Positions 10,511 through 23,658 of a stretch of DNA of 64,000 nt are shown piece after piece. The translations under genes were made by a program, and so were the position numbers. The DNA is taken from positions 124,001-188,000 of the IMG/VR virus record IMGVR_UViG_3300047320_000285; one strand, 5' to 3'. Each line of letters opens with the position of its first letter. Within the stretch, counting starts at the first letter, position 1. The notes beneath the pieces are model-generated. The model was not told the origin of the DNA and did no database searches. It saw nothing but the letters and a program-made list of their open reading frames with translations.

Positions 10511-11713
10511 ATGAGTGCCCATTTTGGCCAGAACGTTTTCTTCGGCGCTCCGATTGTACGAGTAGGCGTGTATCCTGCTGAACGTGCGTACGATCTTTCT
10601 CCTGTGGAAATCAAGCAGGAGTTTATCAACGAGCTGCATGAGAACGTCACCATCGTGCTAAGGAATGGGTTGCCCTTTCAGATTCGCGGCAAGAAAGGAC
10701 AAGCCCGCCGAAGACTGACGGTCAATTACACCATCGTTATCAGTGGTGAAGCGGTACATGAGACTGCGAACGTGCTCGCTCAGATCACTTCCCGCAGTCC
10801 GGTGACTATGCGCATCCTGAAGGAGGCTTATGAATCCCACGCAAGGAATTATTCGCCCAACCAACCGATCGTACTCAAACTTGAGTACATCATCACCCGC
10901 GAGGAGTTGAGAAAATACGGCAATTCCCTCTATCATCACGGATTGGATTGCTGGATCAGTACTACCGAGAGCACCAACTACGCAGTGCATCCGTATTCCG
11001 AAGAGGGCATGCTGCAAGGCACGATCTGGAATAACACACCCGATGCAGTCAAAGGTGGGGGTGCGTTGTATGCCGTGGAGATTGTCGATAACCTCGGCAC
11101 GTTTGGCGATCGGTATCTGAATATTGCCAACGAGATCTATCCGGTTCGGGCCAAGAAAGATGCCAAGCGCACCGATGGCGTGTATATCACGCGCACGTTA
11201 CCGAGCGAAGGGGAGTTGGGACGCGGGGAGATTGTGGCAGCGCATTGGCCGTTTAACAAGGCCGATGGTGCAGACTTCGATTTCACTGAGTTCCATCTGT
11301 ATCGGACTTTCACCGATGCCAAGACGCTGGGCGACATTGCGTCGGCCCGCAAGGCGGAGTTGCAGAGCAAAGATCACGAGCTGCAGCTCGGGCGCAAAGA
11401 ACTGGAGGCACTCAAACAGGAGGCGGAACGGAACAAGGCGGACTTCGACAGGGATAAACAAGCGCAAGAACGTGAGAACCAGCGCCTGCAACAGGAGATC
11501 ACTGAAAAGGATCGCCGGTATAAGGAGCTAGAAGTTGAGCGCGAGCGCATCAAGCATGAGTTGGAGTTGGAAAGAATGCGCAAGAAGGATCAGTACGAGG
11601 AACGGTCATCCAAGCGTAAGGATACGAGCGAGATGGTGAAGATCTTACCTGCCTTGATACTGGGGGCAGCCGCGATTATCACCACGCTTATCAGCGTGAC
11701 AAGGTCTAAGTAG
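10511..11713 (+). CDS. Conserved protein with long coiled coil and C-terminal TM anchor (phiKZ gp122-like position)
   Basis: SD AGGAG. E/K/R-rich heptads in the last ~130 aa, then ILPALILGAAAIITTLISV. Confidence 0.8.
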   Translation: MSAHFGQNVFFGAPIVRVGVYPAERAYDLSPVEIKQEFINELHENVTIVLRNGLPFQIRGKKGQARRRLTVNYTIVISGEAVHETANVLAQITSRSPVTMRILKEAYESHARNYSPNQPIVLKLEYIITREELRKYGNSLYHHGLDCWISTTESTNYAVHPYSEEGMLQGTIWNNTPDAVKGGGALYAVEIVDNLGTFGDRYLNIANEIYPVRAKKDAKRTDGVYITRTLPSEGELGRGEIVAAHWPFNKADGADFDFTEFHLYRTFTDAKTLGDIASARKAELQSKDHELQLGRKELEALKQEAERNKADFDRDKQAQERENQRLQQEITEKDRRYKELEVERERIKHELELERMRKKDQYEERSSKRKDTSEMVKILPALILGAAAIITTLISVTRSK

Positions 11714-11856: not shown

Positions 11857-13509
11857 ATGGACGCAGAACTGGCACGGCTCATAGCCCAGGAAACACCGGA
11901 CCTCAACCCGGATTTGGCCAACGGGTTAGCAGTCAAGCATATCCCGGATGTGGAGCCGTATATTGACTCCATCTTCCGGGCGCTGCAAAAGGGATTTCCG
12001 GATGGGTTTTCTTACGTCACCTCCACCCGTTGCGGGCCACAGGGTGACTTTGATGAGCTGACCAAGAAGAAGAACGGCAGTAAGCGGTACTACGATGTGG
12101 CGACCAGCCAACTGTTCATGACGATGCTGGTGTTCAAGTATCGGGGTGAAGAGATCCGGCGGCCACTGCAACTGCCTTATGTGGAAGACGCAGGGGTCAT
12201 CTACTTGGGCGGTTCGCGGTTTGTGATCTCGCCGGTGCTCTCTGACCGGGTAATGTCAGTGGACCTGAACAGTATCTTTATCCGCTTTAACCGGGGTAAG
12301 GTGACCTTCGAGCGCTCACCGCAGTATTTCCGCGCGAACGACGTGCAGGAAACGGTGGACGTGGTACACGGCAAGATCTATAACCGTCCCACCAAACAGA
12401 CCGGCACAGCCAAGCCCACCGTCAAAGGTAACACGACGCTGGTGCATTATCTGTTCTGCAAGTTTGGGGTGCATGAAACGTTTGAACGGTTCGCTGGCAC
12501 GGTGCCGGTATTTGGCGATGCGGAGACGGTCAATCATCACACGCATCCGCAGGATCAGTGGGTGATCTGCGAAAGCAGCGGTATCAAGCCGCGCGGCGTT
12601 GGCGACAAGATCTGGGTGCCCAGCCCGATTCGACTCGCTGTGCGTCGTGATCAGTACACGGCCACGATGAAGAATTATATCGCTGGTCTGTACTATATCC
12701 TCGATCACTTCCCCCGTCGCGTGGAGCTGAATCAGTTCACCGACGAGAAGTTCCGCAATCACACGGGCCGCTGGCGCGTGCTGATGGGCTATCTGATCTT
12801 TGGTGGTAACATCATGGAAGGTCACCTGCATGATAACGTGACGGATCACATCGGCAGTCTCGATGAGTACGTTGACGAAATCATGCGCGTGAAGTTCCGC
12901 GAGATCAAAGTCCCGGTAGAAGACATCTACCAGTTCTTCGGCATCCTGATCGAGCGCTTTAACCAGTGGTTGCTCGATGGGGCGGACAAGATCAACAGCC
13001 TCTATGACAAGGAACTCGGTGTTCTGTATTACGTCATGGAAGATGTCACGATCATGATCAACACGTTCTATTTCAAGTTGATCGCCAGTGCCAAGAGCAA
13101 GCGGGAAATGGGTAAGGACTTGAAAAAGGACGACATCGTCGACCTGATGAACAAGTTCCTGCGCCCCGGGAAGATCTACTCGGTCACCAAGATGCACCAA
13201 GAGGTGTCGACCACTTCGTGCTCGGGTGACAACAAGGCATTCAAAATCACCTCGATGATGGTGCCTCAAGCCAAGACCTCGCGACGCGCGGGTCGTTCTG
13301 ACAGCGGCGCGATGACCGATCCGGCTAAGATTCTCCACACCTCCGTGGCCGAGATTGGCGGGTATGCCAACATGCCCAAGAGTGATCCGTCGGGTCACTC
13401 ACGGATCAATCTGTACGCGCAGATCGATCGTTTTGGGGTGGTGCTCCAGAATCCGGAGCTGGTGTCGATCCTCAAGCCGACCGAGGAAATGATCCGTCGC
13501 AAGCAGTAA
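11857..13509 (+). CDS. Non-virion RNA polymerase beta subunit, N-terminal part (phiKZ gp123-like)
   Basis: 550 aa. LQLPYVEDAGVIYLGGSRFVISPVLSD matches the RpoB N-terminal LPx(n)GxFIINGxERV region. Synteny after the capsid gene. Confidence 0.85.
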   Translation: MDAELARLIAQETPDLNPDLANGLAVKHIPDVEPYIDSIFRALQKGFPDGFSYVTSTRCGPQGDFDELTKKKNGSKRYYDVATSQLFMTMLVFKYRGEEIRRPLQLPYVEDAGVIYLGGSRFVISPVLSDRVMSVDLNSIFIRFNRGKVTFERSPQYFRANDVQETVDVVHGKIYNRPTKQTGTAKPTVKGNTTLVHYLFCKFGVHETFERFAGTVPVFGDAETVNHHTHPQDQWVICESSGIKPRGVGDKIWVPSPIRLAVRRDQYTATMKNYIAGLYYILDHFPRRVELNQFTDEKFRNHTGRWRVLMGYLIFGGNIMEGHLHDNVTDHIGSLDEYVDEIMRVKFREIKVPVEDIYQFFGILIERFNQWLLDGADKINSLYDKELGVLYYVMEDVTIMINTFYFKLIASAKSKREMGKDLKKDDIVDLMNKFLRPGKIYSVTKMHQEVSTTSCSGDNKAFKITSMMVPQAKTSRRAGRSDSGAMTDPAKILHTSVAEIGGYANMPKSDPSGHSRINLYAQIDRFGVVLQNPELVSILKPTEEMIRRKQ

Positions 13510-13591
13510 CTACGCAGTAGACAAGTAAACACTTTTTTCATACGAGGGCTACAGGGACGCCTGTGGACCAATAAACAAGGAAGATAGCGCT

Positions 13592-15670
13592 ATGAGCAAT
13601 CAACAACTGCCGTTCGATCCCGAGAACTTGATGTGGCCAACCCAGTGGCTGAACATCGAGAATCCTCCGTTCGTCCCGCAGATCAACGTGGACCAACGTG
13701 CCGCGAATTATCTGCCGGTGATCTCGGGTCTGCTGATGCAGGAAATCCAGAACAACGCGCAACCGGGTCGACCGCTGCGCGTGTTCATGTATAACCTGTA
13801 TTCGAACAACGGTTGGGCGAACGAGAACTTCGCTCGTACCGTCGCAGGTATCTGTGACTGGTTCATTATGGCGATGGAGACGAATCAGTATCGCAGTGAG
13901 CAGGACTGTCTGACGGATATCGTGCCGAAGATGGCGGAGTTGGCCGCAGCAACCCAGCTGCGCGACTATCCGGCGTTGGAAGGCTACATCGACGCCAACA
14001 TGCATAACGCGACGGTTCAGCTGATCAACAACTTCGACGGCATCGCCCATCAGATCCAGAGCTACATGTCGCGTCAGCAGCAAGGTAGCCAGTGGGGCAA
14101 CCGCGGACAGCAGCAGCAAGGCGGGGGCTGGCAGGATCGTCAACGTGGTGACTGGCAAGGTCGGCGTCAAACGGGTGGAGGTAGCAACTGGGAAGGTTCA
14201 ACCCAGCGCCAGACCAAACCCCTCGACACGTTTGGCTCGGGTGGTTCCAATCTCTTCAGCGGTCGTCAGGCTGGTGGGGATCGTTGGGGCAAAAGTGGCT
14301 CGCAGGCCGAAGAAGGCAGCACGCGTTTCGATCGGCGTCGTGAAGAGCCGGCCCAATCGCGTTCCTCGGATGTCGAGGTGTCGGGTGGCGCAAAGATGGA
14401 TGACGGCTTTAACACCGGCTGGCGTCGCAAGGAGCAGCAACCGGCGGCGAAACCCACCCACGTCGAGATCGAGCAGACCGGTTCTACGCCGGCGCTGAAT
14501 AAGGGCAAGCTCGTCGAAGCGGTGCAGGAAGCGGTGGAAGTGCTGGCTGACGAAGCGAAGGCGGCCAAGCTGGTATGGAAGCCGAGTATCGATCAGCCGT
14601 ATCCGCTCGCCTACAACCCGCGTACGCAGTTGCTGTATCTGCGTAAGGAAACCAGCCACGCTGCTGTTATTCAAGTCGTCAAGGATCGTCAGGAAGGTTC
14701 CGTGGATTACGAAAAGCACAAGATCGTTCGCAGTTTTGGTCCGGGCGCGCGCAAGCTCTCGCCGGAAGAAAACCAGAAGAAACTCGAAGCCATGCGCCAG
14801 TCGCTGGAGCCGAGGAGCTTGGACGATCCGACCCTCACGGAAGAAGCACGTGCGCTCCTGAAGAACCGCGTGGTGTCCGACGCATGGATCATGGAAACGT
14901 CGCAAGATCTGGCGTGGGTCGTGGGTCTGGTCGGCAAGGAAGTCGACGGCATCGAAGGGACGTTGCCGGATGTCTATCATCGCCGCGCGAAGATCTGCGT
15001 GCCGGTTGTCGGGCTGGAAGATCAGTCCGCGATGATCCGCGAGCTGGGTGAGTGCGATACGTACGAAGCGCTGAAGCTCAAACTGCTGGCACTGGGTTCG
15101 ACAATGAATCCGGAGTTGTGGCAGCTGAGTGAGCTGAAGATGACGGAGGCGGTCAATCGCGTGCTGTCGCAACGCATGTCGATCGACGACATTCGCATCA
15201 CGTCGTTTATCGAAGACGTGACCGATGTGGTGCCGGTGATTGGCAAGGCGTATGGGCGCGTGTTTGTCGACGCGTTCAATGTTTCGGCGCAGGAAACCAT
15301 TGCCCAGACGTTCCAGACGGTGAACGACGGCATGGCCGAAGAGATTCGCCTGATGACCGACAACATCCTCGCGAACTACACGGGCGAAGCGCCCAACAAG
15401 CTCAAGTTCACGTATCTGATCTCGAACGTGACGATGACCTATCTCTCGTGCATGGCACAGGAGTTGGAAATCGAGCTGGATCCGAAGAAGGCGGTACTGG
15501 TGACCATCAACACGCCGTTTGTGCGTGAACTGCTGGCTGACATCCTCGAACGGGTGTCGGATGACTTCGAGTTCGATCGTCATTTCATCCGTACGGCTGA
15601 CGGTCGGGTGCTGGAGCTGACCCAAGGCTTGCTGGGGAGTAACTCGCTGTTGCTGCGCTGCGTGCGCTAA
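13592..15670 (+). CDS. Hypothetical protein with central Q/G/R/W-rich disordered linker
   Basis: 692 aa, SD AAGGAAG, typical codon use. Confidence 0.85.
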   Translation: MSNQQLPFDPENLMWPTQWLNIENPPFVPQINVDQRAANYLPVISGLLMQEIQNNAQPGRPLRVFMYNLYSNNGWANENFARTVAGICDWFIMAMETNQYRSEQDCLTDIVPKMAELAAATQLRDYPALEGYIDANMHNATVQLINNFDGIAHQIQSYMSRQQQGSQWGNRGQQQQGGGWQDRQRGDWQGRRQTGGGSNWEGSTQRQTKPLDTFGSGGSNLFSGRQAGGDRWGKSGSQAEEGSTRFDRRREEPAQSRSSDVEVSGGAKMDDGFNTGWRRKEQQPAAKPTHVEIEQTGSTPALNKGKLVEAVQEAVEVLADEAKAAKLVWKPSIDQPYPLAYNPRTQLLYLRKETSHAAVIQVVKDRQEGSVDYEKHKIVRSFGPGARKLSPEENQKKLEAMRQSLEPRSLDDPTLTEEARALLKNRVVSDAWIMETSQDLAWVVGLVGKEVDGIEGTLPDVYHRRAKICVPVVGLEDQSAMIRELGECDTYEALKLKLLALGSTMNPELWQLSELKMTEAVNRVLSQRMSIDDIRITSFIEDVTDVVPVIGKAYGRVFVDAFNVSAQETIAQTFQTVNDGMAEEIRLMTDNILANYTGEAPNKLKFTYLISNVTMTYLSCMAQELEIELDPKKAVLVTINTPFVRELLADILERVSDDFEFDRHFIRTADGRVLELTQGLLGSNSLLLRCVR

Positions 15671-15676
15671 AGCTAT

Positions 15677-15709
15677 GAGGGCCCGGGGGAAACCTCGGGC
15701 CCTTGTGCC
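15677..15709 (+). terminator. Hairpin terminator (TGTGCC variant)
   Basis: GAGGGCCCGGGG-GAAA-CCTCGGGCCCTT then GTGCCCTTT. Confidence 0.55.
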
Positions 15710-15727: not shown

Positions 15728-16030
15728 GTGAACAATTACGACCTGCTGAAACAGATTCTCGATGCAAGCGACGAGCACACCGAGCCGTTTGCCGTCGATG
15801 CCCGGATCGACATTCCCAATAACGAAGTGGTGATTCGCCGCACGCTGGGTCCGCTCTCACCGCGCACGCGCGTGGTCCGCTTCGCGCCGCTGGAAGTCGG
15901 TCACCAGATCGAGTACTCGGAAGTCAGCCACGGTGCGCCGCAACCGCCGACCAACGAGACCGCGGACACCACCCACGCGATGGAAGTCTCGCGGCTGGTT
16001 GGTCGGATCTGGACCCATCTGAAGGGATGA
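15728..16030 (+). CDS. Hypothetical protein
   Basis: GTG start with SD GGAGA; ATGA overlap with the next gene. Confidence 0.7.
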   Translation: MNNYDLLKQILDASDEHTEPFAVDARIDIPNNEVVIRRTLGPLSPRTRVVRFAPLEVGHQIEYSEVSHGAPQPPTNETADTTHAMEVSRLVGRIWTHLKG

Positions 16031-16461
16031 TCATGCGCCAAGATCATTTCGTTTATCGCCCGGATTCCACCAAAGTGGGCAAGATGATCGCGATGTTCTT
16101 GGCCGGCAGACTACTGGGACCGGACTGGTCCCGTTATGCCGTCCACCAGTACAGCGAAAAGAACAACGCCTTCGACGGCACGAGCCGGATCCAGCTGCAA
16201 AGCCAGCACGCGACAGGTCCGCAGGAATCCCTACCGTATCTTAAGGTCATGGAACCGGGTGGCAACATCCAGCTCGCTCAAACCATCCGGCTGGAATTCT
16301 GGTCCAATGGCGAGAAGATTTGGGCGCGGCAGTTTCCGTGGGCAGACTTCGACATGGCTGAAGTCGTGGACATCTGGATCTGGCTGCGTTTGTGTGGCAA
16401 AGATGGCAAACTCTGTGGTGCTGAAGAAGGCATCCATCCTGATAATCGCGTTAAACTGTAG
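16027..16461 (+). CDS. Hypothetical protein, paralog of 16474-16926
   Basis: Shared motif F..R.D..K.G.M.AMFLA. Confidence 0.75.
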   Translation: MIMRQDHFVYRPDSTKVGKMIAMFLAGRLLGPDWSRYAVHQYSEKNNAFDGTSRIQLQSQHATGPQESLPYLKVMEPGGNIQLAQTIRLEFWSNGEKIWARQFPWADFDMAEVVDIWIWLRLCGKDGKLCGAEEGIHPDNRVKL

Positions 16462-16473
16462 GAACTTTACACC

Positions 16474-16926
16474 ATGGCCACCAAAGCCGCCGTTATACCT
16501 GAACAAGAAGCCCCCAAGTATCGTTTCCCGCTGCGTGACGACCAGAACAAGGCCGGCCGCATGCTCGCGATGTTCCTCGCGCATTACGCCACCTCAGATA
16601 AGCGCGGCCAAGCACAGGTGCGCTTTGACGTCTACCAGACGATTCACGAGCGGGTTGGTGAGAAAGGCAAATTCGTCACGCTGCCGGTGTTTGTCAGTCG
16701 CATCTATGTGCAGCGCGACATCGACACTGACGATACGTTGCCCGGCCGTCCTTACCTACTGGTGGAAGAAACCCGCGGCGAAGTGATGGAAGACGACATC
16801 GTCATGGTCACCAAGGTCGAAATCGACGGCAAGGGTCGACCCAACCGTGATCGTCCCCATTCGCTCAAGCTCGATGAGCTGATGTTCAAAGCCGGCGAGA
16901 GCTACGAGTTTCTCGTCGGCATGTAA
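16474..16926 (+). CDS. Hypothetical protein, paralog of 16027-16461
   Basis: SD AGGA; RDDQNKAGRMLAMFLA. Confidence 0.75.
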   Translation: MATKAAVIPEQEAPKYRFPLRDDQNKAGRMLAMFLAHYATSDKRGQAQVRFDVYQTIHERVGEKGKFVTLPVFVSRIYVQRDIDTDDTLPGRPYLLVEETRGEVMEDDIVMVTKVEIDGKGRPNRDRPHSLKLDELMFKAGESYEFLVGM

Positions 16927-16935
16927 GGAGGCGCC

Positions 16936-17466
16936 ATGAGCGTACTGGTGTCAGTGACGTCGCCTGATCACGACCAAGACCAGATGAACGCGGTCGCCTC
17001 GGTCATCTTTGCGGATCTGATGGCAGATGGCTTTACCGATGTGCGGCTGGCCTTGGAGTATCCGGAAGGCAACGAAAAGATGATCGCGGAAGGCGGGGAT
17101 GACTATGCGTTTAACCCGCAGACCGTGCTCGAGGAATTGAAGCTGTCGCACGCGGAACTGTTCCAGAAGCCGGTGGTGATCACGGTGCCGGTTTTGGAGA
17201 TGCAAGGGCGGACGTGGGAAGTGATGGCCGATAGCCGGAACCCGGCACCCGAGGACATGGAGCCGGATGAGTATCCGTCCGATTATCTACCTGAGAACCG
17301 CCGCTGGCTGAATCTGGAGCCGAACGGGGATTGGGCACGAGGAATCGAACCTCCGCCGCCACCGCCCGAACCGACCGCGCAAGAGCGGGCACAGGCCGAG
17401 AAAGACAGCCTGATCGCCTACGGTCAGTCAGTCCTCGCCAAGGTCCGCAACAAAACATCGCGTTAA
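16936..17466 (+). CDS. Paralog-array protein 1 (unknown ~90-aa domain)
   Basis: SD AAGGAGG; DGFTDV...TVLEELKLSHAELFQKPVVI. Confidence 0.8.
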   Translation: MSVLVSVTSPDHDQDQMNAVASVIFADLMADGFTDVRLALEYPEGNEKMIAEGGDDYAFNPQTVLEELKLSHAELFQKPVVITVPVLEMQGRTWEVMADSRNPAPEDMEPDEYPSDYLPENRRWLNLEPNGDWARGIEPPPPPPEPTAQERAQAEKDSLIAYGQSVLAKVRNKTSR

Positions 17467-17475
17467 GGAGGCCTT

Positions 17476-18009
17476 ATGGGCATGGTAACGGTAAAGGTCG
17501 AAGGTGACGATCAAGAGCAGGTCAGTGGCGTTGCGGCTGGTGTGATGGTGGGGCTGGAGAACACCGGCTTTAAGAACGTGAAGCTGGGGGTCGAGTACGA
17601 AGCCAGCAACATGGAAGCGATTATCAATCGCGATCGATCGCTGGATGCACCCAGTACCCTACTGGCGACGCTGAAGATGCGTAATCCGGATCTGTTCGAG
17701 CAACCGGTGATGGTGCACGTGCCGGTGGTGAAGCCGACAGGTGGGTTGACGGTGTACGCTACCGAGGACAACATCATCCTCGAGGAAAAGGATGAGCATC
17801 CTCACCATCAGCCGATGCGGCTCGATCCTGCGCCCCAAGACGACATAGCGGAAATCTCGATCAAGTTCGCGGGCCGCAAGCATGTGTGCTGGGTCGGCGA
17901 TACCGAGAACGTGCAAGCCTGCTTTATCGATGGCAAGTGCTACGCACTGCCCGGGGCCTTTGTCGAGGGTCTGACAACCGTACTCGAGCCTCATCTGGCC
18001 AAGGATTGA
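17476..18009 (+). CDS. Paralog-array protein 2
   Basis: SD AAGGAGG; TGFKNV...TLLATLKMRNPDLFEQPVMV. Confidence 0.8.
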   Translation: MGMVTVKVEGDDQEQVSGVAAGVMVGLENTGFKNVKLGVEYEASNMEAIINRDRSLDAPSTLLATLKMRNPDLFEQPVMVHVPVVKPTGGLTVYATEDNIILEEKDEHPHHQPMRLDPAPQDDIAEISIKFAGRKHVCWVGDTENVQACFIDGKCYALPGAFVEGLTTVLEPHLAKD

Positions 18010-18112
18010 ACCCAGATCTCCCAGTGGCTGACGGGGAGATTAAAAAATGACGTCGGCCATCCATCCAATGCATTACCCGTAGTACCTATCTACAATCAAG
18101 GAGAGTAGTAGA

Positions 18113-18397
18113 ATGGACGCAGCAAACATCAACATCACCGCAGAATCCGAAGTCCTCGCTAACGCCATCTCCGTCGCGGTAAGCCAAGGCCTGTCCCAAG
18201 CCGGCTTCACCAACGTGATGAGCGTGACGGAAGTGCTGGAACCGGATTCGTTGCTGGCGCAAGTGCGTAACACCGCACCGGAACTCTTCGACACGGCGAT
18301 CGAGATCACCCAGAACGCGATCATCCCGAACGAAGAAATCGACGACGACGAAGGTCCCACGGCTGACGACCTGCCGGCGGACGAAGTCCCTGCGTAA
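18113..18397 (+). CDS. Paralog-array protein 3 (minimal domain + acidic tail)
   Basis: SD AAGGAG; AGFTNV...SLLAQVRNTAPELFDTAIEI. Confidence 0.8.
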   Translation: MDAANINITAESEVLANAISVAVSQGLSQAGFTNVMSVTEVLEPDSLLAQVRNTAPELFDTAIEITQNAIIPNEEIDDDEGPTADDLPADEVPA

Positions 18398-18414
18398 GCG
18401 GGTTTAAGCAGGAC

Positions 18415-18444
18415 GGCGGGGGCTTCGGCTCCCGCCTCTGTGCC
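18415..18444 (+). terminator. Hairpin terminator with cUUCGg loop
   Basis: GGCGGGGGC-TTCG-GCTCCCGCC-TC-TGTGCC followed by a T-rich run. Confidence 0.6.
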
Positions 18445-18475
18445 GCACCTTTCTTTTATACGAACTAATACGAAC

Positions 18476-18937
18476 ATGAACCAATTTAGCCGTCATCGCA
18501 ATAACATCGTGGGCCAAACGCTGTGCGAACGCGTACGCGCCAGCGTCATGAAAGAGCTGATCGCCGCCCGTGGCCCGGGTAAGCTGTTGCCGGTGTCGCA
18601 ATTCTTGGCGCTCCCCACGGCATGGGGGCCGCCGGAATTCCGTCTCTCGTTTCTGTATGCCAAGGAAACGGGTCAGCGCGAAATCCGCTTTACCGAATAC
18701 GCGGGCGCGAATTTCTTCAGCTGGTCGTTTAACCTGAACGACGACATCCGGCTGGAACACTACGTGCCGGTGACCCTGACGACCGAGCAGCAAGAGATCG
18801 TGCGGCAAGCGATCCACAAATACTTCCTGACGGGCTCGTATGTCGTGCATGGCTACGAAGCGCTCTTCATGACGGGGACGGATTTGTACCACGCATGGAT
18901 GAACAACACGCAAGTCAACGAGGCCCAAGCGGCCTGA
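18476..18937 (+). CDS. Hypothetical protein (start 18476 or 18440)
   Basis: Protein-like composition; interrupts the paralog array. Confidence 0.65.
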   Translation: MNQFSRHRNNIVGQTLCERVRASVMKELIAARGPGKLLPVSQFLALPTAWGPPEFRLSFLYAKETGQREIRFTEYAGANFFSWSFNLNDDIRLEHYVPVTLTTEQQEIVRQAIHKYFLTGSYVVHGYEALFMTGTDLYHAWMNNTQVNEAQAA

Positions 18938-18944
18938 GGAGGCC

Positions 18945-19370
18945 ATGATGGAAGAAGATCAGGATCCGGTCAAGATCACTGTAGCAGGTGGTGGTTATGG
19001 GGCCAACACGCTGGTGTTTGGTGTGGTGCATGACGCGCTGGTGAAAGCGGGCTTTCACAGCGTGCGACCCAGCGAAATGCGCGGCTTTAACGAAGACGCG
19101 GGTCGGATGACTTCCCTGCTCGATGTGGTGCGGTCGATTCATCCGCATCTGTTCTATACGCCCGTCCACGTGCATCAGGATCTGGAGCAGGTGCGCTTTA
19201 CCGATGACGAGACCTTTCCGACGACTGCCGCATTGGAGGAAACTATTCACAAGGTCGTGCGCAAAGACTACGTGGATTACTACTCGGTGGTCACCGATCA
19301 GAATCTCGGCAACAGTCGGCATCTGGAAGAACTCCTAGATGCTCCGCCGATTGAGAGGGGCGTGATATGA
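18945..19370 (+). CDS. Paralog-array protein 4
   Basis: SD GAGGAGG; PVKITVAGG...VHDALVKAGFHSV...SLLDVVRSIHPHLFYTPVHV. Confidence 0.8.
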   Translation: MMEEDQDPVKITVAGGGYGANTLVFGVVHDALVKAGFHSVRPSEMRGFNEDAGRMTSLLDVVRSIHPHLFYTPVHVHQDLEQVRFTDDETFPTTAALEETIHKVVRKDYVDYYSVVTDQNLGNSRHLEELLDAPPIERGVI

Positions 19371-19795
19371 CCAAGCCTTTGAAGATCACCATCGAGGGCG
19401 GGAGTTTCGTCACCAACGTGGCGGCGTTTAATCTGGTCCATGATGCACTCGAAGGCGATGATCGGTTTCGCGACGTACGCTTCGAGCATCCGTTGGGCAC
19501 CGAACGGCCGTTGGTCGGTACGCCCGTTAGTCTACTAAAGACCCTGCAACGGAAGTACTGGGATCTGTTTGACGAGCCGGTGACGATTGTGCAGGACCTT
19601 GCAGGGGTGTCGGGTTACGACGAGGTCGACTGGGGTGAGCGACGTATCTTACTGGATATCGCCTACAAGACAGGCTTCTGTGCGGGTGAGTTAGACAACC
19701 GGGACGCAGTGGAAGCCGCCATCAAAGCAGCCATTGCTGGTTTAAAAGGAGAGCAAGATGGAAAAGAAAGAAGCACTTCAGCCGCTGAAGGTTGA
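19367..19795 (+). CDS. Paralog-array protein 5
   Basis: ATGA coupling; PLKITIEGG...VHDALEGDDRFRDV...SLLKTLQRKYWDLFDEPVTI. Confidence 0.8.
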   Translation: MTKPLKITIEGGSFVTNVAAFNLVHDALEGDDRFRDVRFEHPLGTERPLVGTPVSLLKTLQRKYWDLFDEPVTIVQDLAGVSGYDEVDWGERRILLDIAYKTGFCAGELDNRDAVEAAIKAAIAGLKGEQDGKERSTSAAEG

Positions 19796-20360
19796 AGTTT
19801 CGGGCGGTAGTCAAGTCGCCAACACACTCGTCTACGGGTTGATTCAGACGACCTTGCGAGGCGCTGGGTTCGATGATCTGAAACTGCAGCACCCCTACGG
19901 GTCTGCGGAGTCTGCGGATTCAGACGACATGGTGAGCCTGTTGGAAGTCTTGCAAGTCTCGAACCCGCAGTTGTTCGAAGTCCCGGTAACCTTGGTCCAG
20001 AAGGTCACCGACCGGACCTACGACTGGGGACAGCCGACGCATTTGGTCGAAAGCTTCGTGTACGGTGCTGACGAATACGAAGGTAAAGACTGTTCGAATG
20101 CCGAAATCTATCGCACCGAACAAGCCAAGGCTTTCCTCGCGAAGGTGCATGCCAACCAGACCCCAGCGGATCGTGCAGCGGCTGATGCCGAAGAACTCGC
20201 GATGGAAAGCAAGTTCTTGAAGCACATGAGCAATCCGGCGGTTCGCGAGGTACTGGAAGATCTGTTCGACGAAAAGATCAGCGAGACAGAATTGGCCGAG
20301 TTGCGCGCGAGCGTGGAAGCTAAGCAGAAAGCGGCTAAACAAGAAGCGTCTACGGCATAA
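19758..20360 (+). CDS. Paralog-array protein 6
   Basis: SD AAGGAG; PLKVEVSGG...LRGAGFDDL...SLLEVLQVSNPQLFEVPVTL. Confidence 0.8.
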   Translation: MEKKEALQPLKVEVSGGSQVANTLVYGLIQTTLRGAGFDDLKLQHPYGSAESADSDDMVSLLEVLQVSNPQLFEVPVTLVQKVTDRTYDWGQPTHLVESFVYGADEYEGKDCSNAEIYRTEQAKAFLAKVHANQTPADRAAADAEELAMESKFLKHMSNPAVREVLEDLFDEKISETELAELRASVEAKQKAAKQEASTA

Positions 20361-20402
20361 GCCTCCGAGCCCTCTACCTTTTGGGGTAGAGGGACGTATG
20401 CC
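20354..20402 (+). terminator. GGCATA...TATGCC hairpin
   Basis: CCCTCTACC stem with GGTAGAGGG, flanked by GGCATA and TATGCC, then a T tract. Confidence 0.65.
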
Positions 20403-20453
20403 GTCCTTTCTTTTTTGGCTTAATCTGATGTCCCCCTCATTCCAAGGATCGTC

Positions 20454-20804
20454 ATGTACCTGCCTTTGCAACCCCCGCCGGGCCCTTACGCCAGCCAAGA
20501 GACGCTCTTCGAGTGGCTCAAAGCGAACTGTCGCGACGCCACCTTACCGGCGACTATTTTCGCGCTGTGGAGTTACCCGCTCGCCGTCGTCCTCAAATAC
20601 AAGGTGGCCAAAGTGCGGGACTCTGCCAGTGCCTTAGCTGCTGACCCGACTAACAATCCCGCCCGGGGTGGGCGGGTCGACATTATCGTGCTGGAAGATG
20701 TCGATAACGATTGTGCGTTGTTTCACGTCGTGCTGGATACCGCCTTCAATACCAACCAGACGGGTGAGTGGATTACCGGTATCAACCCCCTGACAAGTGC
20801 CTAG
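20454..20804 (+). CDS. Hypothetical protein
   Basis: SD AAGGA; 116 aa; bounded by two hairpins. Confidence 0.65.
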   Translation: MYLPLQPPPGPYASQETLFEWLKANCRDATLPATIFALWSYPLAVVLKYKVAKVRDSASALAADPTNNPARGGRVDIIVLEDVDNDCALFHVVLDTAFNTNQTGEWITGINPLTSA

Positions 20805-20850: not shown

Positions 20851-23658
20851 TTACAGCTTGAAACCGCTATCGTCTTCGAGGGGGTTGTCACCCTTGTTCT
20901 CGTCGTTAGCGTTGGCGTCAGGATTCTCTTCAGTCGGACCACCCAAACCGCCCAGACCATCATCCAGACCCCCCAGACCCGTATCCAAGCCACCGAGTCC
21001 GTCGTCGAAACCACCCCCAAAGCCACCGCCACTGCCCGCGCTCGAAGTCGAGGTCGCTTCCGAGGTGGTGGCTTCTGCCCCGCCCTCAGTCGTATCGGCT
21101 TCTTTGCGTTTGGCTTCAGCAGCGTTGGCTTCCTTCTTGAGTTCAGTCATCTTATCCAAGAAGTGGTTGATGGTGGCGCCCATCGCCTTGGCGTGCTCGC
21201 TACTGACGTTGTACAGATCGACCCGCGGCTTGCCTTCTTCGTCGGTGGACACGAGTTCCGACAACTCCGAGAGCATGCCCGTTTCGGCCATGTACTTACG
21301 CGCGTAGTAGGCCTTGATGTTCTCCTTGACCATGTCGACGTGTTCCGACACATCGCCAATCGTATCAGCATTGAGGATGTTGGTCGAGACATAGTAATCG
21401 AGCGCCTTCTCCAGCGTTTCCATGTACTTGTCGAACGCCGCTGCTTGGTTCTCCAGCGACACCGAGTTCGGTCGTGGCAACGAGACCTTAAAGCCCAGCA
21501 CGAAGTCGTACAGCGCCTCGCGGATGATCAGCTCCTTCAGCTGGTCCTTGCTACCCTCAGCCAGCCGCGAGAAGCGTGCTTTCATCTCCTCATCGTTCTC
21601 GTAGCGACGCAAAATCGCGTCGTACTTGGATTCGATGATCTTGCGCAGATCTTTGATGAGACCTTCATCGTTCATCGCCACTTTGTGCAGGTGATCTTCC
21701 ACCAGCGGCACGAACTGATCCTGCAAGCTGATCACGTTCTTCGAGATCAGGATGTTGTTGGTCACGATCGAGGTGGCAAACTCCGCCTCATAGCCCGCAT
21801 CCACCACCTGTGCCGGCAGACCAAACTTCTGGATCGAGCGCTTGCGCAAGTCCTCTTCCAGCTCCGTGTCCGGCTTCACGTAGTTGCTGTTCTTCTCCGT
21901 GAATTCCACCGACGTATCCGGCATCCGGGGGTGACCCGAGAAGCTGAACTCGAATGCGGCCCGCTGCATGTAATCCGTCAGGTCCACCGGTGAGGTGACG
22001 CCGATCGGGAAGGCTTGCTGACGCGTGCGGGCGATTTCGTGCATGTAGCGCTCAATCGTCTTTTGCGGATCCGGATCGGTTTCATCCAGCTTGATCGCCA
22101 CGCCGGTGCGGCCGATGGAGTTCTTCATCGCCGCCATGGTGTTGGAGAACGTCAGCATCGAGCGCAGCGACGACAGGATCTTCATCTCGTCGAGTACCGA
22201 GCGACCGATCCCATCCGGGCTGAACTTGAACGCAAAGTACGTCATCAGCTCAATCGGCAGGAACAGCATCTGCGTGTGCTGTGAGGCCAGCGCGCGTGCC
22301 AGCATGATCCGGTAGACTTCCGGCTTATTCGCCAGTGCTACGCCGTTGGTGTAGATGCCGTTACGCAGACGACTGAGCAGATCCTGCTCCACCATCGCGC
22401 CATACACCTGAGCCGAGTAAGCCAGATGTTGCCGGTTACCGGTATCAAAGCCGCTGATGTTGGCCTTGACCTTGTTCAGCATCGCGGTGGCAAACGAACC
22501 ACCGGAGTTCATCCGGTTCCCCATCTGGGAGTAGATATCTTCCGGATTCTGACGGGTCAAGGGATTGCCGTCTTCGTCGATCAGCACAAAGAAGCCCACC
22601 TGCTGCTTGACGTTGCCCGGCACATACACCGGAATCACCGCTTCGCTGGGCAAGTGCATGATCAGCGGCGCACCCACCGTGCGACGGTTCAGGCGCTCCT
22701 GCGTGACGATCGTATCGATGGGCCGGTACTGACGGTTCGGGCTCTTGTAGAGCAGGTTATGCAGTTCCCGATCCGACAGTTTGGAGGGATCTTCCGCATA
22801 CTTCTCCAGCGCCATGCCGCCTAGCGCGCCCTTGACGCGCTCTTCGCGGATCTTCTGGTTGACCTGCGGGATCTTCAACAGGTTCTGGTTGTCAATTACC
22901 GAGGTGAAGGTATCCTGCGCCTTGCCACCGAAGTGGTCTTCCAGTGCCAGATATGAATCGTACTCCGGACCTTTGCGCCGGGACGGATCGTTAAACGACT
23001 CCATCGACAGCGAGGCTTGCTTGCCGCCGACCACGCTCTGCTGGCCCTTCTTGGTCGGATTACCCAGCAAGCCCTTACACTTGATCGAGCCATCGGCGTT
23101 GATGTCCGAGGACAGACTTTCCATCTTGATAAAGCGATTGTTGTTAATCACTTCATCGATGGCGTTTTCCGGAATCACCGCCACCGGGTAAGAACCCGTG
23201 TGCAGAATCATGTCCTTGAGCCACGAGGACATAAGCGGTTTAATGTTATAGTCGGTCTCGAAATACTTCCCCAACCGATCCACCAAGGCAGCCGCCACGT
23301 CAGGAGGCAAGCTGCCCTCCGGGGCGCTATAATTCACCTCGGTGGTCATCATGTCTTTCGGGGACAGGATACACGAAATCAGGATGGTTGCCGCCAGTTC
23401 CGTTTCCGGCAGCACTTGCATCACGGTCTCGGCGTCCGTAATGTCGCGCCCAATCCGCTCCGACAGATTCCGCAGTTCGAAGACGTTCGGTTCACCCGGT
23501 TGCATTTCGCCACGTTGGCTGAACTTGGCGGGTTCGCGGCCGGGAATCAGCTTGGAAAGCATTGCCGCCAGTTCCGGTTCATTCCGTACCAACGGCATGA
23601 CCGGATACTGTTTCCCCTTGCTCGCCAGGCCGATTGCGGTCTTAAGCGCTTTTGACAT
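20851..23658 (-). CDS. Portal protein (phiKZ gp129-like)
   Basis: 935 aa; YPVAVIPENAID, HLPSEAVIPV, YFAFKFSPDGIGRS. SME/ALE sites in the N-terminal third, acidic Gly-rich tail, divergent from the gp128-like gene as in phiKZ. Confidence 0.8.
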   Translation of the reverse strand: MSKALKTAIGLASKGKQYPVMPLVRNEPELAAMLSKLIPGREPAKFSQRGEMQPGEPNVFELRNLSERIGRDITDAETVMQVLPETELAATILISCILSPKDMMTTEVNYSAPEGSLPPDVAAALVDRLGKYFETDYNIKPLMSSWLKDMILHTGSYPVAVIPENAIDEVINNNRFIKMESLSSDINADGSIKCKGLLGNPTKKGQQSVVGGKQASLSMESFNDPSRRKGPEYDSYLALEDHFGGKAQDTFTSVIDNQNLLKIPQVNQKIREERVKGALGGMALEKYAEDPSKLSDRELHNLLYKSPNRQYRPIDTIVTQERLNRRTVGAPLIMHLPSEAVIPVYVPGNVKQQVGFFVLIDEDGNPLTRQNPEDIYSQMGNRMNSGGSFATAMLNKVKANISGFDTGNRQHLAYSAQVYGAMVEQDLLSRLRNGIYTNGVALANKPEVYRIMLARALASQHTQMLFLPIELMTYFAFKFSPDGIGRSVLDEMKILSSLRSMLTFSNTMAAMKNSIGRTGVAIKLDETDPDPQKTIERYMHEIARTRQQAFPIGVTSPVDLTDYMQRAAFEFSFSGHPRMPDTSVEFTEKNSNYVKPDTELEEDLRKRSIQKFGLPAQVVDAGYEAEFATSIVTNNILISKNVISLQDQFVPLVEDHLHKVAMNDEGLIKDLRKIIESKYDAILRRYENDEEMKARFSRLAEGSKDQLKELIIREALYDFVLGFKVSLPRPNSVSLENQAAAFDKYMETLEKALDYYVSTNILNADTIGDVSEHVDMVKENIKAYYARKYMAETGMLSELSELVSTDEEGKPRVDLYNVSSEHAKAMGATINHFLDKMTELKKEANAAEAKRKEADTTEGGAEATTSEATSTSSAGSGGGFGGGFDDGLGGLDTGLGGLDDGLGGLGGPTEENPDANANDENKGDNPLEDDSGFKL

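What the first reader, a model, noticed from the sequence alone, without database searches (positions are those of the whole stretch)
16936..20360. Six-member tandem array of an unknown ~90-aa domain
Seen: six genes share strand (I/V-x-V-x-G/S), helix, (A/T/D)GF(T/K/H/D)(D/N/S)V, then (S/T)LL..L....P.LF..PV.(I/V), with variable C-terminal tails. Two subfamilies (16936/17476 and 18945/19367/19758) plus a minimal version (18113). Most have near-perfect SD sequences and several are translationally coupled. The DNA has diverged, so the expansion is old and retained. The island sits between the nvRNAP region and portal. Inference: a diversified, highly expressed family such as anti-defence or host-takeover factors, or hetero-oligomer subunits. 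I cannot assign it to a known family.
Basis: partly seen in the sequence, partly recalled or inferred. Interest (0 to 1): 0.7.

Follow-up and report, generated by a model that had tools for sequence, protein, structure and literature searches.

The report
Expanded acidic-protein family in jumbo phage
A phiKZ-like giant phage from a rhizosphere metagenome carries six diverged tandem copies, plus distal remnants, of a small, very acidic, probably dimer-forming protein that has no known family or fold. It is a real gene family of moderate interest and its function is still untested.

Summary
Six + strand genes (16936-20360) share a ~75-aa strand-helix-strand-helix-strand domain. A profile built from any five finds the sixth among 2,521 ORFs of the genome (E 2e-6 to 3e-16).

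The window is part of a 253.7-kb phiKZ-like phage. The array lies between homologues of phiKZ gp123 (nvRNAP subunit) and gp124 on one side and the portal gene on the other.

A profile search of 1.84 billion proteins gave 183 relatives. All contexts inspected were this same locus in related jumbo phages, with 1 to 9 or more copies. Two cultured phages carry dispersed copies instead. phiKZ and several others have none, and unrelated small genes fill the slot there.

g3 (94 aa, domain plus acidic tail) is the conserved, ancestral-type member. g1 and g5 are missing from the closest relative.

The family is uniformly acidic (median pI 4.17). Its conserved positions are hydrophobic or structural Gly/Pro, so it has no enzyme-like signature. 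It matches nothing functionally annotated in Pfam, PHROGs, NCBIfam, PDB or AFDB. A homodimer model passed its controls (0.51 against 0.00).

Best reading: non-enzymatic acidic dimers with variable tails, acting as an accessory host-interaction or decoy family. That function is inferred, not shown.

The parts
16936..17466 (+). g1, 176 aa. Family member of subfamily A. It is a duplicate of g2 found only in this lineage, on a long branch. It has a C-terminal Pro-rich linker followed by a helix.
   Evidence: It has no orthologue in the close relative L019.
17476..18009 (+). g2, 177 aa. Family member of subfamily A.
   Evidence: Its L019 orthologue is 57% identical over the N-terminal domain but has a different C-terminus. 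dN/dS is 0.35.
18113..18397 (+). g3, 94 aa. Minimal ancestral-type member: the domain plus a disordered acidic tail, net charge -18, pI 4.05.
   Evidence: It is 89% identical in L019. It groups with the single-copy forms of L004 and L007. The homodimer model scored 0.51 against a best control of 0.00.
18415..18436 (+). 9-bp hairpin with a TTCG loop just after the g3 stop. It is followed by TCTGTGCC and then TTTATAC, 14 nt before the next start codon. It is a likely boundary between transcription units.
   Evidence: Read from the sequence. Motif context.
18476..18937 (+). Unrelated 153-aa gene inside the array. The listed ORF starts at GTG 18440; the likely true start is ATG 18476.
   Evidence: It is not hit by the family HMMs. 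It is 50% identical in L019, with the alignment starting at residue 13 of the long ORF. It has a weak homologue beside the L018 array.
18945..19370 (+). g4, 141 aa (or 140 aa from ATG 18948). Family member of subfamily B.
   Evidence: Its L019 orthologue is 67% identical. dN/dS is 0.21.
19367..19795 (+). g5, 142 aa. Family member of subfamily B. Its start overlaps the g4 stop as ATGA. It has no orthologue in L019.
19758..20360 (+). g6, 200 aa. Family member of subfamily B with a long helical C-terminal extension. It overlaps g5 by 38 nt.
   Evidence: Its L019 orthologue is 48% identical. dN/dS is 0.20.
20370..20419 (+). Two overlapping hairpins followed by a T-run: an intrinsic-terminator-like end of the g4-g6 unit. 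The stretch contains TATGCC, a TATG late-promoter-like motif, 51 nt before the next gene.
   Evidence: The TATG late-promoter motif of phiKZ is described in PMC4666361.
20454..20804 (+). 116-aa neighbouring gene. It is not a family member but often accompanies the family.
   Evidence: It is 76% identical in L019 and 42% identical next to the single family copy in L007.
15728..16926 (+). Three small upstream genes (100, 142-144 and 150 aa) in the same apparent unit as g1-g3. They are not family members. The last two share a short motif.
15679..15702 (+). 10-bp hairpin with a GAAA loop after the gp124-like gene, followed by TTGTGCC and CTTTAAC.
   Evidence: Read from the sequence.
11857..15670 (+). 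Left flank. Homologue of phiKZ gp123 (nvRNAP subunit, 550 aa) and homologue of phiKZ gp124 (692 aa).
   Evidence: BLASTP gives 3e-84 and 2e-11.
20851..23658 (-). Right flank. Portal protein homologue (phiKZ gp129 type), convergent with the array.
   Evidence: phrog_3004 at 8e-211. It is 52.9% identical to Burkholderia phage FLC9 gp80.

Best explanation
The six genes are tandem paralogues of an uncharacterised accessory family found, as far as inspected, only in jumbo phages.

Shown:
- Each protein starts with a ~75-aa strand-helix-strand-loop-helix-strand domain. Its conserved positions are hydrophobic or structural Gly/Pro, so there is no catalytic signature.
- Every member is strongly acidic.
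- C-terminal tails differ between paralogues.
- The family occupies a hypervariable slot between the gp124-like gene and the portal gene. Copy number runs from 1 to 9 or more among relatives, and the family is absent from others.
- g3 (domain plus a short acidic tail) is the conserved ancestral type. The other copies arose mostly by old duplications, with recent gain or loss of g1 and g5.

Modelled: the domain forms an intertwined symmetric homodimer. Strand 1 pairs antiparallel with strand 1 of the partner, strand 3 pairs with the partner's strand 1, and the first helices pack together.

Inferred: the proteins are non-enzymatic dimeric acidic adaptors or decoys, similar in manner to DNA mimics. 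Their negative surface and paired tails would bind basic, nucleic-acid-binding surfaces of host proteins, or possibly phage proteins. Duplication and tail diversification would widen the set of targets, giving a host-takeover or counter-defence role.

My confidence in the descriptive part is about 0.9. My confidence in the decoy or host-interaction mechanism is about 0.35-0.4. The single confidence value given for this explanation refers to the mechanism.
For: Paralogy.

Wider family: 183 hits at E<=1e-3 among 1.84 billion representatives, 20 at <=1e-10.

Same locus wherever the flanks were visible (MCP / gp123-like / gp124-like / family / portal), with these copy numbers:
- 1 copy: L004, L017, L042
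- 2 copies: L016
- 4 copies: L019, L041
- 5 copies: FLC9, and 5 or more in L043
- 5-6 copies: L018
- 6 copies: the window, L015
- 9 copies: L013

Absent or elsewhere in other relatives:
- No copy in phiKZ, LucasX, FLC8 or the 98%-complete G002, where unrelated small genes fill the slot.
- Dispersed copies in RP12 and FLC1-1B.

Acidity: median pI 4.17 over 150 representatives. Short forms carry a mean net charge of -13. The phage proteome median is 5.74.

Conserved columns are hydrophobic or Gly/Pro only.

Homodimer model: score 0.51 against a best control of 0.00. In the tool's calibration this mark was reached by 20 of 30 proteins solved as pairs of one chain and by 1 of 23 solved as single chains. 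The counts hold only roughly because my own alignment was used. Runs share at least 95% of contacts, and the partner's pLDDT is at least 66. The monomer model has pLDDT 73 but no sheet, as expected if the strands pair between chains.

One relative fuses the domain to a winged-HTH DNA-binding domain, which fits a dimerisation module.

Selection: dN/dS is 0.2-0.35. The non-g3 copies evolve faster (48-67% identity) than the flanking core genes (69-88%).

Tree: orthologous pairs across phages, with g1 as a recent long-branch duplicate of g2.
Against: - No partner, binding activity, localisation or expression time is known.
- The decoy idea rests on charge, dimer prediction, lack of catalytic residues and accessory distribution, all of which are generic features.
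- The dimer is a model, made with my own alignment.
- Nucleus-forming phages shield their DNA, which lowers the need for classic anti-restriction DNA mimics.
- The family sits among late or structural genes, next to the portal and downstream of the capsid gene. This would also suit an assembly role.
- g3 is as conserved as an RNA polymerase subunit (dN 0.07). That looks more like a fixed housekeeping partner than an arms-race gene.
Confidence: 0.38

Rival explanations
1. Head-assembly or internal virion proteins. These would be acidic scaffold-like, chaperone-like or ejected proteins made with the capsid and portal, analogous to T4 internal proteins or the paralogous inner-body proteins of phiKZ.
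For: - The position is in the MCP-to-portal block.
- Acidity is typical of scaffolding proteins.
- Variable paralogous internal proteins are known in T4 and phiKZ (my own knowledge).
- The next gene, 20454-20804, carries a TATG late-type motif.
Against: - No alignment column carries a conserved S/A/G-x-E protease site; the maximum is 17% of rows.
- The family is absent from phiKZ and from several relatives with the same head genes.
- RP12 and FLC1-1B keep their copies far from the head genes.
- In the phiKZ record the flanking gp121-gp125 genes carry no structural note, whereas gp119 and gp127-gp129 do (gp126 is named a virion structural protein).
- The two units that hold family genes lack the TATG motif and carry TGTG instead.
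Confidence: 0.2
2. Subunits of one hetero-oligomeric complex. The paralogues would assemble with each other through the shared domain, so copy number would reflect the composition of the complex.
For: - The conserved hydrophobic positions coincide with the modelled dimer interface, so mixed dimers are conceivable.
- Translational coupling of g4/g5/g6 is typical of complex subunits.
Against: - Copy number runs from 1 to 9 or more in otherwise similar phages, and close relatives differ (4 against 6 copies). A fixed complex would not tolerate this.
- The single-copy state is common, and a homodimer is already predicted for g3.
- Heteromers were not modelled.
Confidence: 0.15
3. Transcription accessory factors of the phage non-virion RNA polymerase. 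These would be small acidic adaptors in the manner of T4 gp33 or AsiA, encoded just downstream of an nvRNAP subunit.
For: - The family is adjacent to the gp123-like nvRNAP subunit operon in all loci where the flanks were visible.
- That operon is preceded by the ATATTAC early-like motif, and the hairpin after it has no T-run, so read-through is possible.
- One relative has an RNAP alpha-CTD-like gene two genes downstream.
- The most conserved member, g3, evolves as slowly as the polymerase subunit.
Against: - The family is absent from phiKZ and other phages that have the same polymerase.
- The similarity to AsiA is insignificant (Z 2.8).
- Adjacency alone is weak evidence.
- Multiplication to nine copies is unusual for a polymerase cofactor.
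Confidence: 0.1
4. The ORFs are chance frames or decaying pseudogenes, and the similarity is a compositional artefact.
For: None beyond the low pairwise identity of 18-37%.
Against: - Leave-one-out E-values reach 3e-16.
- There are 183 database relatives.
- Orthologues are conserved with dN/dS of 0.2-0.35.
- Shine-Dalgarno sites are strong.
- All six have positive coding scores.
Confidence: 0.01

Closest known systems
DNA-mimic phage proteins (T7 Ocr, ArdA, T4 Arn, T7 gp5.9, phi29 p56, Ugi)
   Same: They are small, very acidic and non-enzymatic, and several act as dimers. They are encoded by phages as accessory genes. These properties are from my own knowledge. Charge and the dimer model were tested here.
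   Different: There is no sequence or fold relation to any of them. No target is known. The fold here is an intertwined alpha/beta dimer with disordered tails. Tandem expansion to 6-9 copies is not typical of those families.
T4 internal proteins and other genes of phage hyperplastic regions
   Same: They are variable, lineage-specific small genes clustered in a slot between conserved blocks, with gain and loss between close relatives.
   Different: T4 internal proteins share only a short capsid-targeting peptide that is cleaved by the prohead protease. Here a whole 75-aa folded domain is shared, and no conserved cleavage motif exists.
Paralogous inner-body and head protein families of phiKZ and 201phi2-1
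   Same: They are paralogous families within phiKZ-like genomes, located near head genes.
   Different: No homologue exists in phiKZ itself. The proteins here are much smaller. There is no S/A/G-x-E processing site. Virion presence is unknown.
Ribbon-helix-helix and other small dimers that pair N-terminal strands
   Same: In the model the N-terminal strands of two chains pair antiparallel on the two-fold axis, and the helices pack across the dimer.
   Different: This domain has two further strands. It is acidic rather than basic. It has no RHH Pfam match, so a DNA-binding ribbon is unlikely.
PHROG 38013 (unknown function)
   Same: Eight of 150 family representatives match it, best E 1.8e-7, so part of the family is already clustered in PHROGs.
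   Different: It carries no annotation. None of the six window proteins reaches it.

Membership tests
Ocr / ArdA-type DNA-mimic anti-restriction proteins | Sequence membership in the Ocr or ArdA Pfam families | tested here: not met
   No Pfam hit for the six proteins, and no Ocr or ArdA model among the families matched by the 150 relatives. No PDB sequence or fold match.
Ocr / ArdA-type DNA-mimic anti-restriction proteins | Strongly negative surface charge | tested here: met
   pI is 4.05-4.99 for the six proteins and the median is 4.17 for 150 relatives. The arrangement of charges on the surface was not analysed.
Ocr / ArdA-type DNA-mimic anti-restriction proteins | Dimeric, elongated mimic of B-form DNA | tested here: inconclusive
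   The homodimer model passed its controls (0.51 against 0.00). Its shape could not be compared with DNA.
Ocr / ArdA-type DNA-mimic anti-restriction proteins | Binds and blocks a DNA-binding enzyme | not testable with these tools
   This needs pull-downs or inhibition assays.
phiKZ-type processed head / inner-body proteins | Conserved S/A/G-x-E prohead-protease site | tested here: not met
   The best alignment column has the motif in only 17% of 150 rows.
phiKZ-type processed head / inner-body proteins | Homologue present in phiKZ | tested here: not met
   A profile search of the whole phiKZ record gave no match. hhalign against gp125 gave probability 0.1.
phiKZ-type processed head / inner-body proteins | Found in purified virions | not testable with these tools
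   No proteome of a phage that carries the family was found.
Ribbon-helix-helix DNA-binding dimers | Antiparallel pairing of N-terminal strands in a dimer | tested here: met
   In the model only. Contacts 7:7', 6:8' and 5:9' have low expected error.
Ribbon-helix-helix DNA-binding dimers | Strand-helix-helix topology with basic or polar DNA-contact residues, and an RHH profile match | tested here: not met
   The topology is strand-helix-strand-helix-strand. The proteins are acidic. There is no RHH Pfam hit.
P-loop NTPases (raised by the strand, Gly-rich loop, helix start and by ESM Atlas rows) | Walker A motif GxxxxGK[ST] | tested here: not met
   The loops read GGGYGANT, GGSQVANT, EGDDQEQV and TAESEVLA. 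No Lys is present, the motif is not conserved, and the domain is only 75 aa.

The most novel reading that the evidence does not exclude
The family is a new fold class of dimeric DNA- or RNA-mimicking decoys specific to phiKZ-like jumbo phages. The conserved g3-type member would neutralise one fixed host nucleic-acid-binding factor. The duplicated members, with their different tails, would each disarm a different host defence or nucleoid protein. The array would then be a counter-defence island whose copy number tracks the host's defence repertoire.
Probability: 0.22. Interest if true: 0.7.

Novelty: new member of a known kind. Interest (0 to 1): 0.45.

Why it matters
Most genes of jumbo phages have no known function. 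This family is a clean, testable unit. It has a defined 75-aa domain with no known fold match and a predicted obligate dimer. It has a conserved ancestral member plus diversifying duplicates. It sits in a variable slot whose content differs even between close relatives. A cultured carrier exists (Burkholderia phage FLC9, and RP12 and FLC1-1B with dispersed copies), so its role can be tested directly. If the proteins prove to be decoys against host DNA-binding factors, they would add a new fold and a new example of tandemly diversified counter-defence in nucleus-forming phages. If they prove structural, they would mark a lineage-specific head component. Either way the family deserves a Pfam/PHROG entry.

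Tried and rejected
- **Family libraries.** Pfam, PHROGs and NCBIfam gave nothing for the six proteins. Across 150 relatives there were only stray hits, plus phrog_38013 (unknown function) and one HTH_39 fusion.
- **Solved structures by sequence.** A profile search of PDB sequences gave nothing below E 0.4.
- **Fold searches with the g3 model.**
  - Foldseek against PDB: best E 2.2.
  - VIA-align wide: best Z 3.5.
  - AFDB clusters: best E 0.44.
  - BFVD: only an uncharacterised RP12 protein, itself a family member.
  - ESM Atlas by shape: small viral hypothetical proteins, plus partial P-loop-like starts, which I reject because there is no Walker A motif.
- **ESM Atlas by features.** No usable hit.
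- **g1 model.** Built on a 6-sequence alignment, it was too poor to use (pLDDT 56).
- **tblastn against 50,697 phage records.** g3 and a single-copy relative found nothing; g6 found only weak FLC9 and FLC1-1B hits. blastn of the region found nothing.
- **phiKZ gp125 and other genes in the same slot.** gp125 is unrelated by hhalign (probability 0.1). The proteins in the same slot of L014 and LucasX were translated and look unrelated.
- **Expression data.** The only 'RNA' run holding anything is probably DNA. It contains a roughly 90%-alike relative with short pieces, so it gives no transcript evidence.
- **Promoter classing.**
  - Whole-genome k-mer over-representation gave nothing.
  - An intergenic k-mer analysis gave three motif classes.
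  - I could not assign them to infection times from the functions of the downstream genes.
- **Other scans.** The sigma-70 scan was at chance level. Rfam found nothing.
- **Literature.** Searches found nothing on this family.

Full report
**Setting**

The window is bases 124001-188000 of a single 253,740-bp contig assembled from a rhizosphere metagenome. It is a phiKZ-like jumbo phage.
- The 935-aa protein on the minus strand at 20851-23658 matches the phiKZ-type portal family (phrog_3004, 8e-211). It is 52.9% identical to gp80 of Burkholderia phage FLC9, the nearest cultured relative.
- Window 11857-13509 is a homologue of phiKZ gp123, an nvRNAP subunit (30% identity, 3e-84).
- Window 13592-15670 is a full-length homologue of phiKZ gp124 (2e-11).

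**The observation**

The six ORFs are present exactly as listed. The family signal is far above chance.
- Pairwise BLASTP links g1-g2 (7e-13), g4-g6 (2e-13) and g5-g6 (4e-14). Links between subfamilies are 4e-4 to 2e-3.
- An HMM of any five domains recovers the sixth among 2,521 stop-to-stop ORFs of the genome, at 1.7e-6 for g3 and 3.4e-16 for g6.
- At DNA level only ~23-nt remnants over the LF..PV motif repeat.

Two corrections are needed.
- An unrelated but genuine gene, 18476-18937, interrupts the array (50% identical in a relative).
- The same HMM finds a seventh, distal copy at genome 59278-59697 (2e-6). It also finds a half-domain in the 274-aa gene at genome 97893-98717.

**Relatives and locus**

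A profile of the six domains was searched against 1.84 billion representative proteins. It returned 183 hits at E<=1e-3 and 20 at <=1e-10.

I inspected eleven independent contigs. Wherever the flanks were visible, the family lay in the same place: DnaB, gp119-like, major capsid protein, a ~390-aa gene, gp123-like, gp124-like, then the family, then the convergent portal gene. Short contigs (L007, L043) show only small neighbouring genes.

Copy number at this locus:

| Copies | Phage or locus |
|---|---|
| 1 | L004, L017, L042 |
| 2 | L016 |
| 4 | L019, L041 |
| 5 | FLC9 (gp82-85 and gp88); 5 or more in L043 |
| 5-6 | L018 |
| 6 | the window, L015 |
| 9 | L013 |

Other relatives differ.
- Ralstonia phages RP12 and FLC1-1B hold one and two copies, elsewhere in the genome.
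- phiKZ, Xanthomonas phage LucasX, Burkholderia phage FLC8 and the 98%-complete record G002 have none.
- In those phages the slot holds other small genes. phiKZ gp125 is unrelated by hhalign. The L014 (141 aa) and LucasX LUCX_289 proteins look unrelated on translation.

The slot is thus a variable region at the convergent ends of two conserved blocks, and the family is accessory rather than core.

**History**

The closest relative is L019. Its flanking genes are 88% and 69% identical to those of the window. It has orthologues of g2 (57% over the domain, with a different C-terminus), g3 (89%), g4 (67%) and g6 (48%), but none of g1 or g5.

A maximum-likelihood tree of 37 domains over 78 columns shows the following.
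- g1 is a long-branch sister of g2, inside a clade that includes the L019 g2 orthologue (support 99/96).
- g3 groups with the single-copy forms of L004 and L007.
- FLC9 copies pair one to one with L018 copies, and L013 copies with L015 copies, with several pairs strongly supported.
- Paralogues of one genome do not cluster together.

The tree rests on few columns and has several long branches, so only the well-supported nodes should be trusted.

dN/dS against L019 is 0.21 for g3, 0.21 for g4, 0.20 for g6 and 0.35 for g2. dS is near saturation for most genes, so these values are rough, but all point to purifying selection. g3 stands out with dN 0.07, similar to the polymerase subunit at 0.085, and with an unusually low dS of 0.34.

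**The protein**

Secondary structure is strand, helix, strand, loop, helix, strand. In a 150-sequence alignment the well-conserved columns are hydrophobic positions plus Gly and Pro (L..aGF.NV and P.LF..PV). No polar column is conserved. An enzyme is therefore unlikely.

The family is uniformly acidic.
- pI is 4.05-4.99 for the six proteins and the median is 4.17 for 150 representatives, against 5.74 for the phage proteome.
- Short members carry a mean net charge of -13, with -5.4 in the last 20 residues.

The AlphaFold model of g3 with the deep alignment has pLDDT 73 but shows no sheet in the monomer.

A two-copy model passed the tool's test.
- The score was 0.51 against a best control of 0.00.
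- In the tool's calibration this mark was reached by 20 of 30 proteins solved as pairs of one chain and by 1 of 23 proteins solved as single chains. These counts hold only roughly because my own alignment was used.
- The three runs share at least 95% of their contacts, and the partner's pLDDT is at least 66.
- The interface covers nearly the whole domain (residues 2-39 and 59-70). Strand 1 pairs antiparallel with strand 1', strand 3 lies against strand 1', and helix 1 lies against helix 1'. This is an intertwined dimer.

The result is a model's confidence, not a measurement.

Extensions vary between members. g1 has a Pro-rich linker and a helix, g6 has a long helical region, and relatives carry other orphan tails. 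One relative carries an N-terminal winged-HTH domain.

**Comparison with known families**

Nothing functionally annotated matches by sequence or fold. The searches were Pfam, PHROGs, NCBIfam, PDB sequence profiles, Foldseek PDB, VIA-align wide, AFDB clusters and BFVD.
- The only structural neighbours are uncharacterised viral proteins, which are family members.
- Eight relatives fall in phrog_38013, which has no known function.
- A resemblance of the first strand, loop and helix to the start of P-loop NTPases fails on the Walker A motif.
- A resemblance to ribbon-helix-helix dimers fails on topology and charge.
- A conserved phiKZ-type protease site is absent.

**Transcription signals (weak evidence)**

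Hairpins follow the gp124-like gene (15679-15702), g3 (18415-18436) and g6 (20370-20419, with a T-run). This suggests two units that hold family genes (15728-18397 and 18476-20360), followed by the gene at 20454.

An intergenic k-mer analysis of my own rough gene calls found three recurring motifs.
- A long motif ending in (T)ATATTAC occurs at about nine upstream regions. One precedes the gene at 10511, which heads the gp123/gp124 operon.
- ttccTT(T)ATACt lies 10-25 nt before about sixteen start codons. One site is TTTATAC before 18476, and a degenerate TTTAAC lies before 15728.
- A hairpin followed by TATGCC occurs at 25 sites, one of them before 20454.

In phiKZ, TATG is the late-promoter core, with transcription starting at the G (PMC4666361). 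The two family-bearing units carry TGTG at that place, not TATG. I could not assign times to the motifs, and no RNA data were obtainable. Expression timing remains open.

**Interpretation**

The secure part is this: a family found only in jumbo phages, accessory, purifying-selected, non-enzymatic and strongly acidic. It is built on a small domain that probably forms an obligate dimer. It has one conserved ancestral-type member (g3) and a varying number of tail-diversified duplicates in a hypervariable slot.

The most likely mode of action is inferred. These would be dimeric acidic adaptors or decoys that bind basic, nucleic-acid-binding surfaces of host proteins, or possibly phage proteins, in the manner of DNA-mimic proteins, with duplication broadening the targets. 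I give this about 0.35-0.4.

The rivals are an assembly or internal-protein role (0.2), subunits of one hetero-oligomer (0.15, not exclusive of the others) and an nvRNAP accessory role (0.1). Chance ORFs are excluded.

The family, its age and its orphan status hold up. The functional guesses are consistent with the data but untested. As a protein family and fold it is undescribed. As a phenomenon, a tandemly expanded accessory family in a phage variable region, it is of a known kind.

Noticed in passing
window 16033-16461 and 16474-16926: Two adjacent small genes (142-144 and 150 aa) upstream of the array share a short N-terminal motif, GKMIAMFLAGRLL / GRMLAMFLAHYAT (BLASTP 7e-4). Both are conserved at 51-55% identity in the close relative L019. 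This may be a second small paralogue pair. Neither has a family match.
   Followed up: partly
genome 59278-59697 (L001 2297-2701) and genome 97893-98717 (L002), both outside the window: There is a distal seventh copy of the domain (134 aa, E 2e-6). A half-domain (strand, helix, strand) also sits in the C-terminal part of a 274-aa protein. Similar distal partial copies exist in FLC9 (208160-208303), G001 (181820-181960) and G003 (121756-121914). An 864-aa protein in L018 starts with the same half-domain.
   Followed up: partly
window 18113-18397 (g3): Synonymous divergence from L019 is only 0.34 at g3, against 0.8-2.2 in the neighbouring genes. g3 is also the only stretch of the array found at about 90% DNA identity in another public run (pieces at 18200-18387). 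Either g3 was recently exchanged between lineages or it is under a nucleotide-level constraint.
   Followed up: partly
whole genome; window sites before 10511, 18476 and 20454: Three recurring intergenic motifs were found. A ~35-nt motif ending in (T)ATATTAC occurs at about nine upstream regions, often followed ~40 nt later by ttccTTATACt close to the start codon. A hairpin followed by TATGCC occurs at 25 sites. The last resembles the TATG late promoter of phiKZ. These are candidate promoter classes for this phage.
   Followed up: partly
L004 8337-8585 and L005 2590-2838: In a relative with a single family copy, the next gene encodes an 82-aa PP-binding (acyl-carrier-protein-like) protein. This is unusual content for this slot.
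   Followed up: no
L042 3415-3840: In another single-copy relative, a 141-aa gene two positions downstream of the family member hits the RNA polymerase alpha C-terminal domain (PF03118).
   Followed up: no
window 13592-15670 and 20851-23658: The gp124-like protein has a Gln/Gly/Arg-rich low-complexity stretch at about residues 160-260. The portal protein ends in Gly-rich GGFGGGF / DDGLGGL repeats.
   Followed up: no
L014 13020-13445, L027 11988-12356, L012 18123-18755: The slot between the gp124-like gene and the portal block holds different small genes in other phiKZ-like phages: a 141-aa gene in L014, LUCX_289 in LucasX and gp125 in phiKZ. gp125 was unrelated by hhalign; the other two look unrelated on translation. 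This marks the slot as a hotspot of gene turnover.
   Followed up: yes
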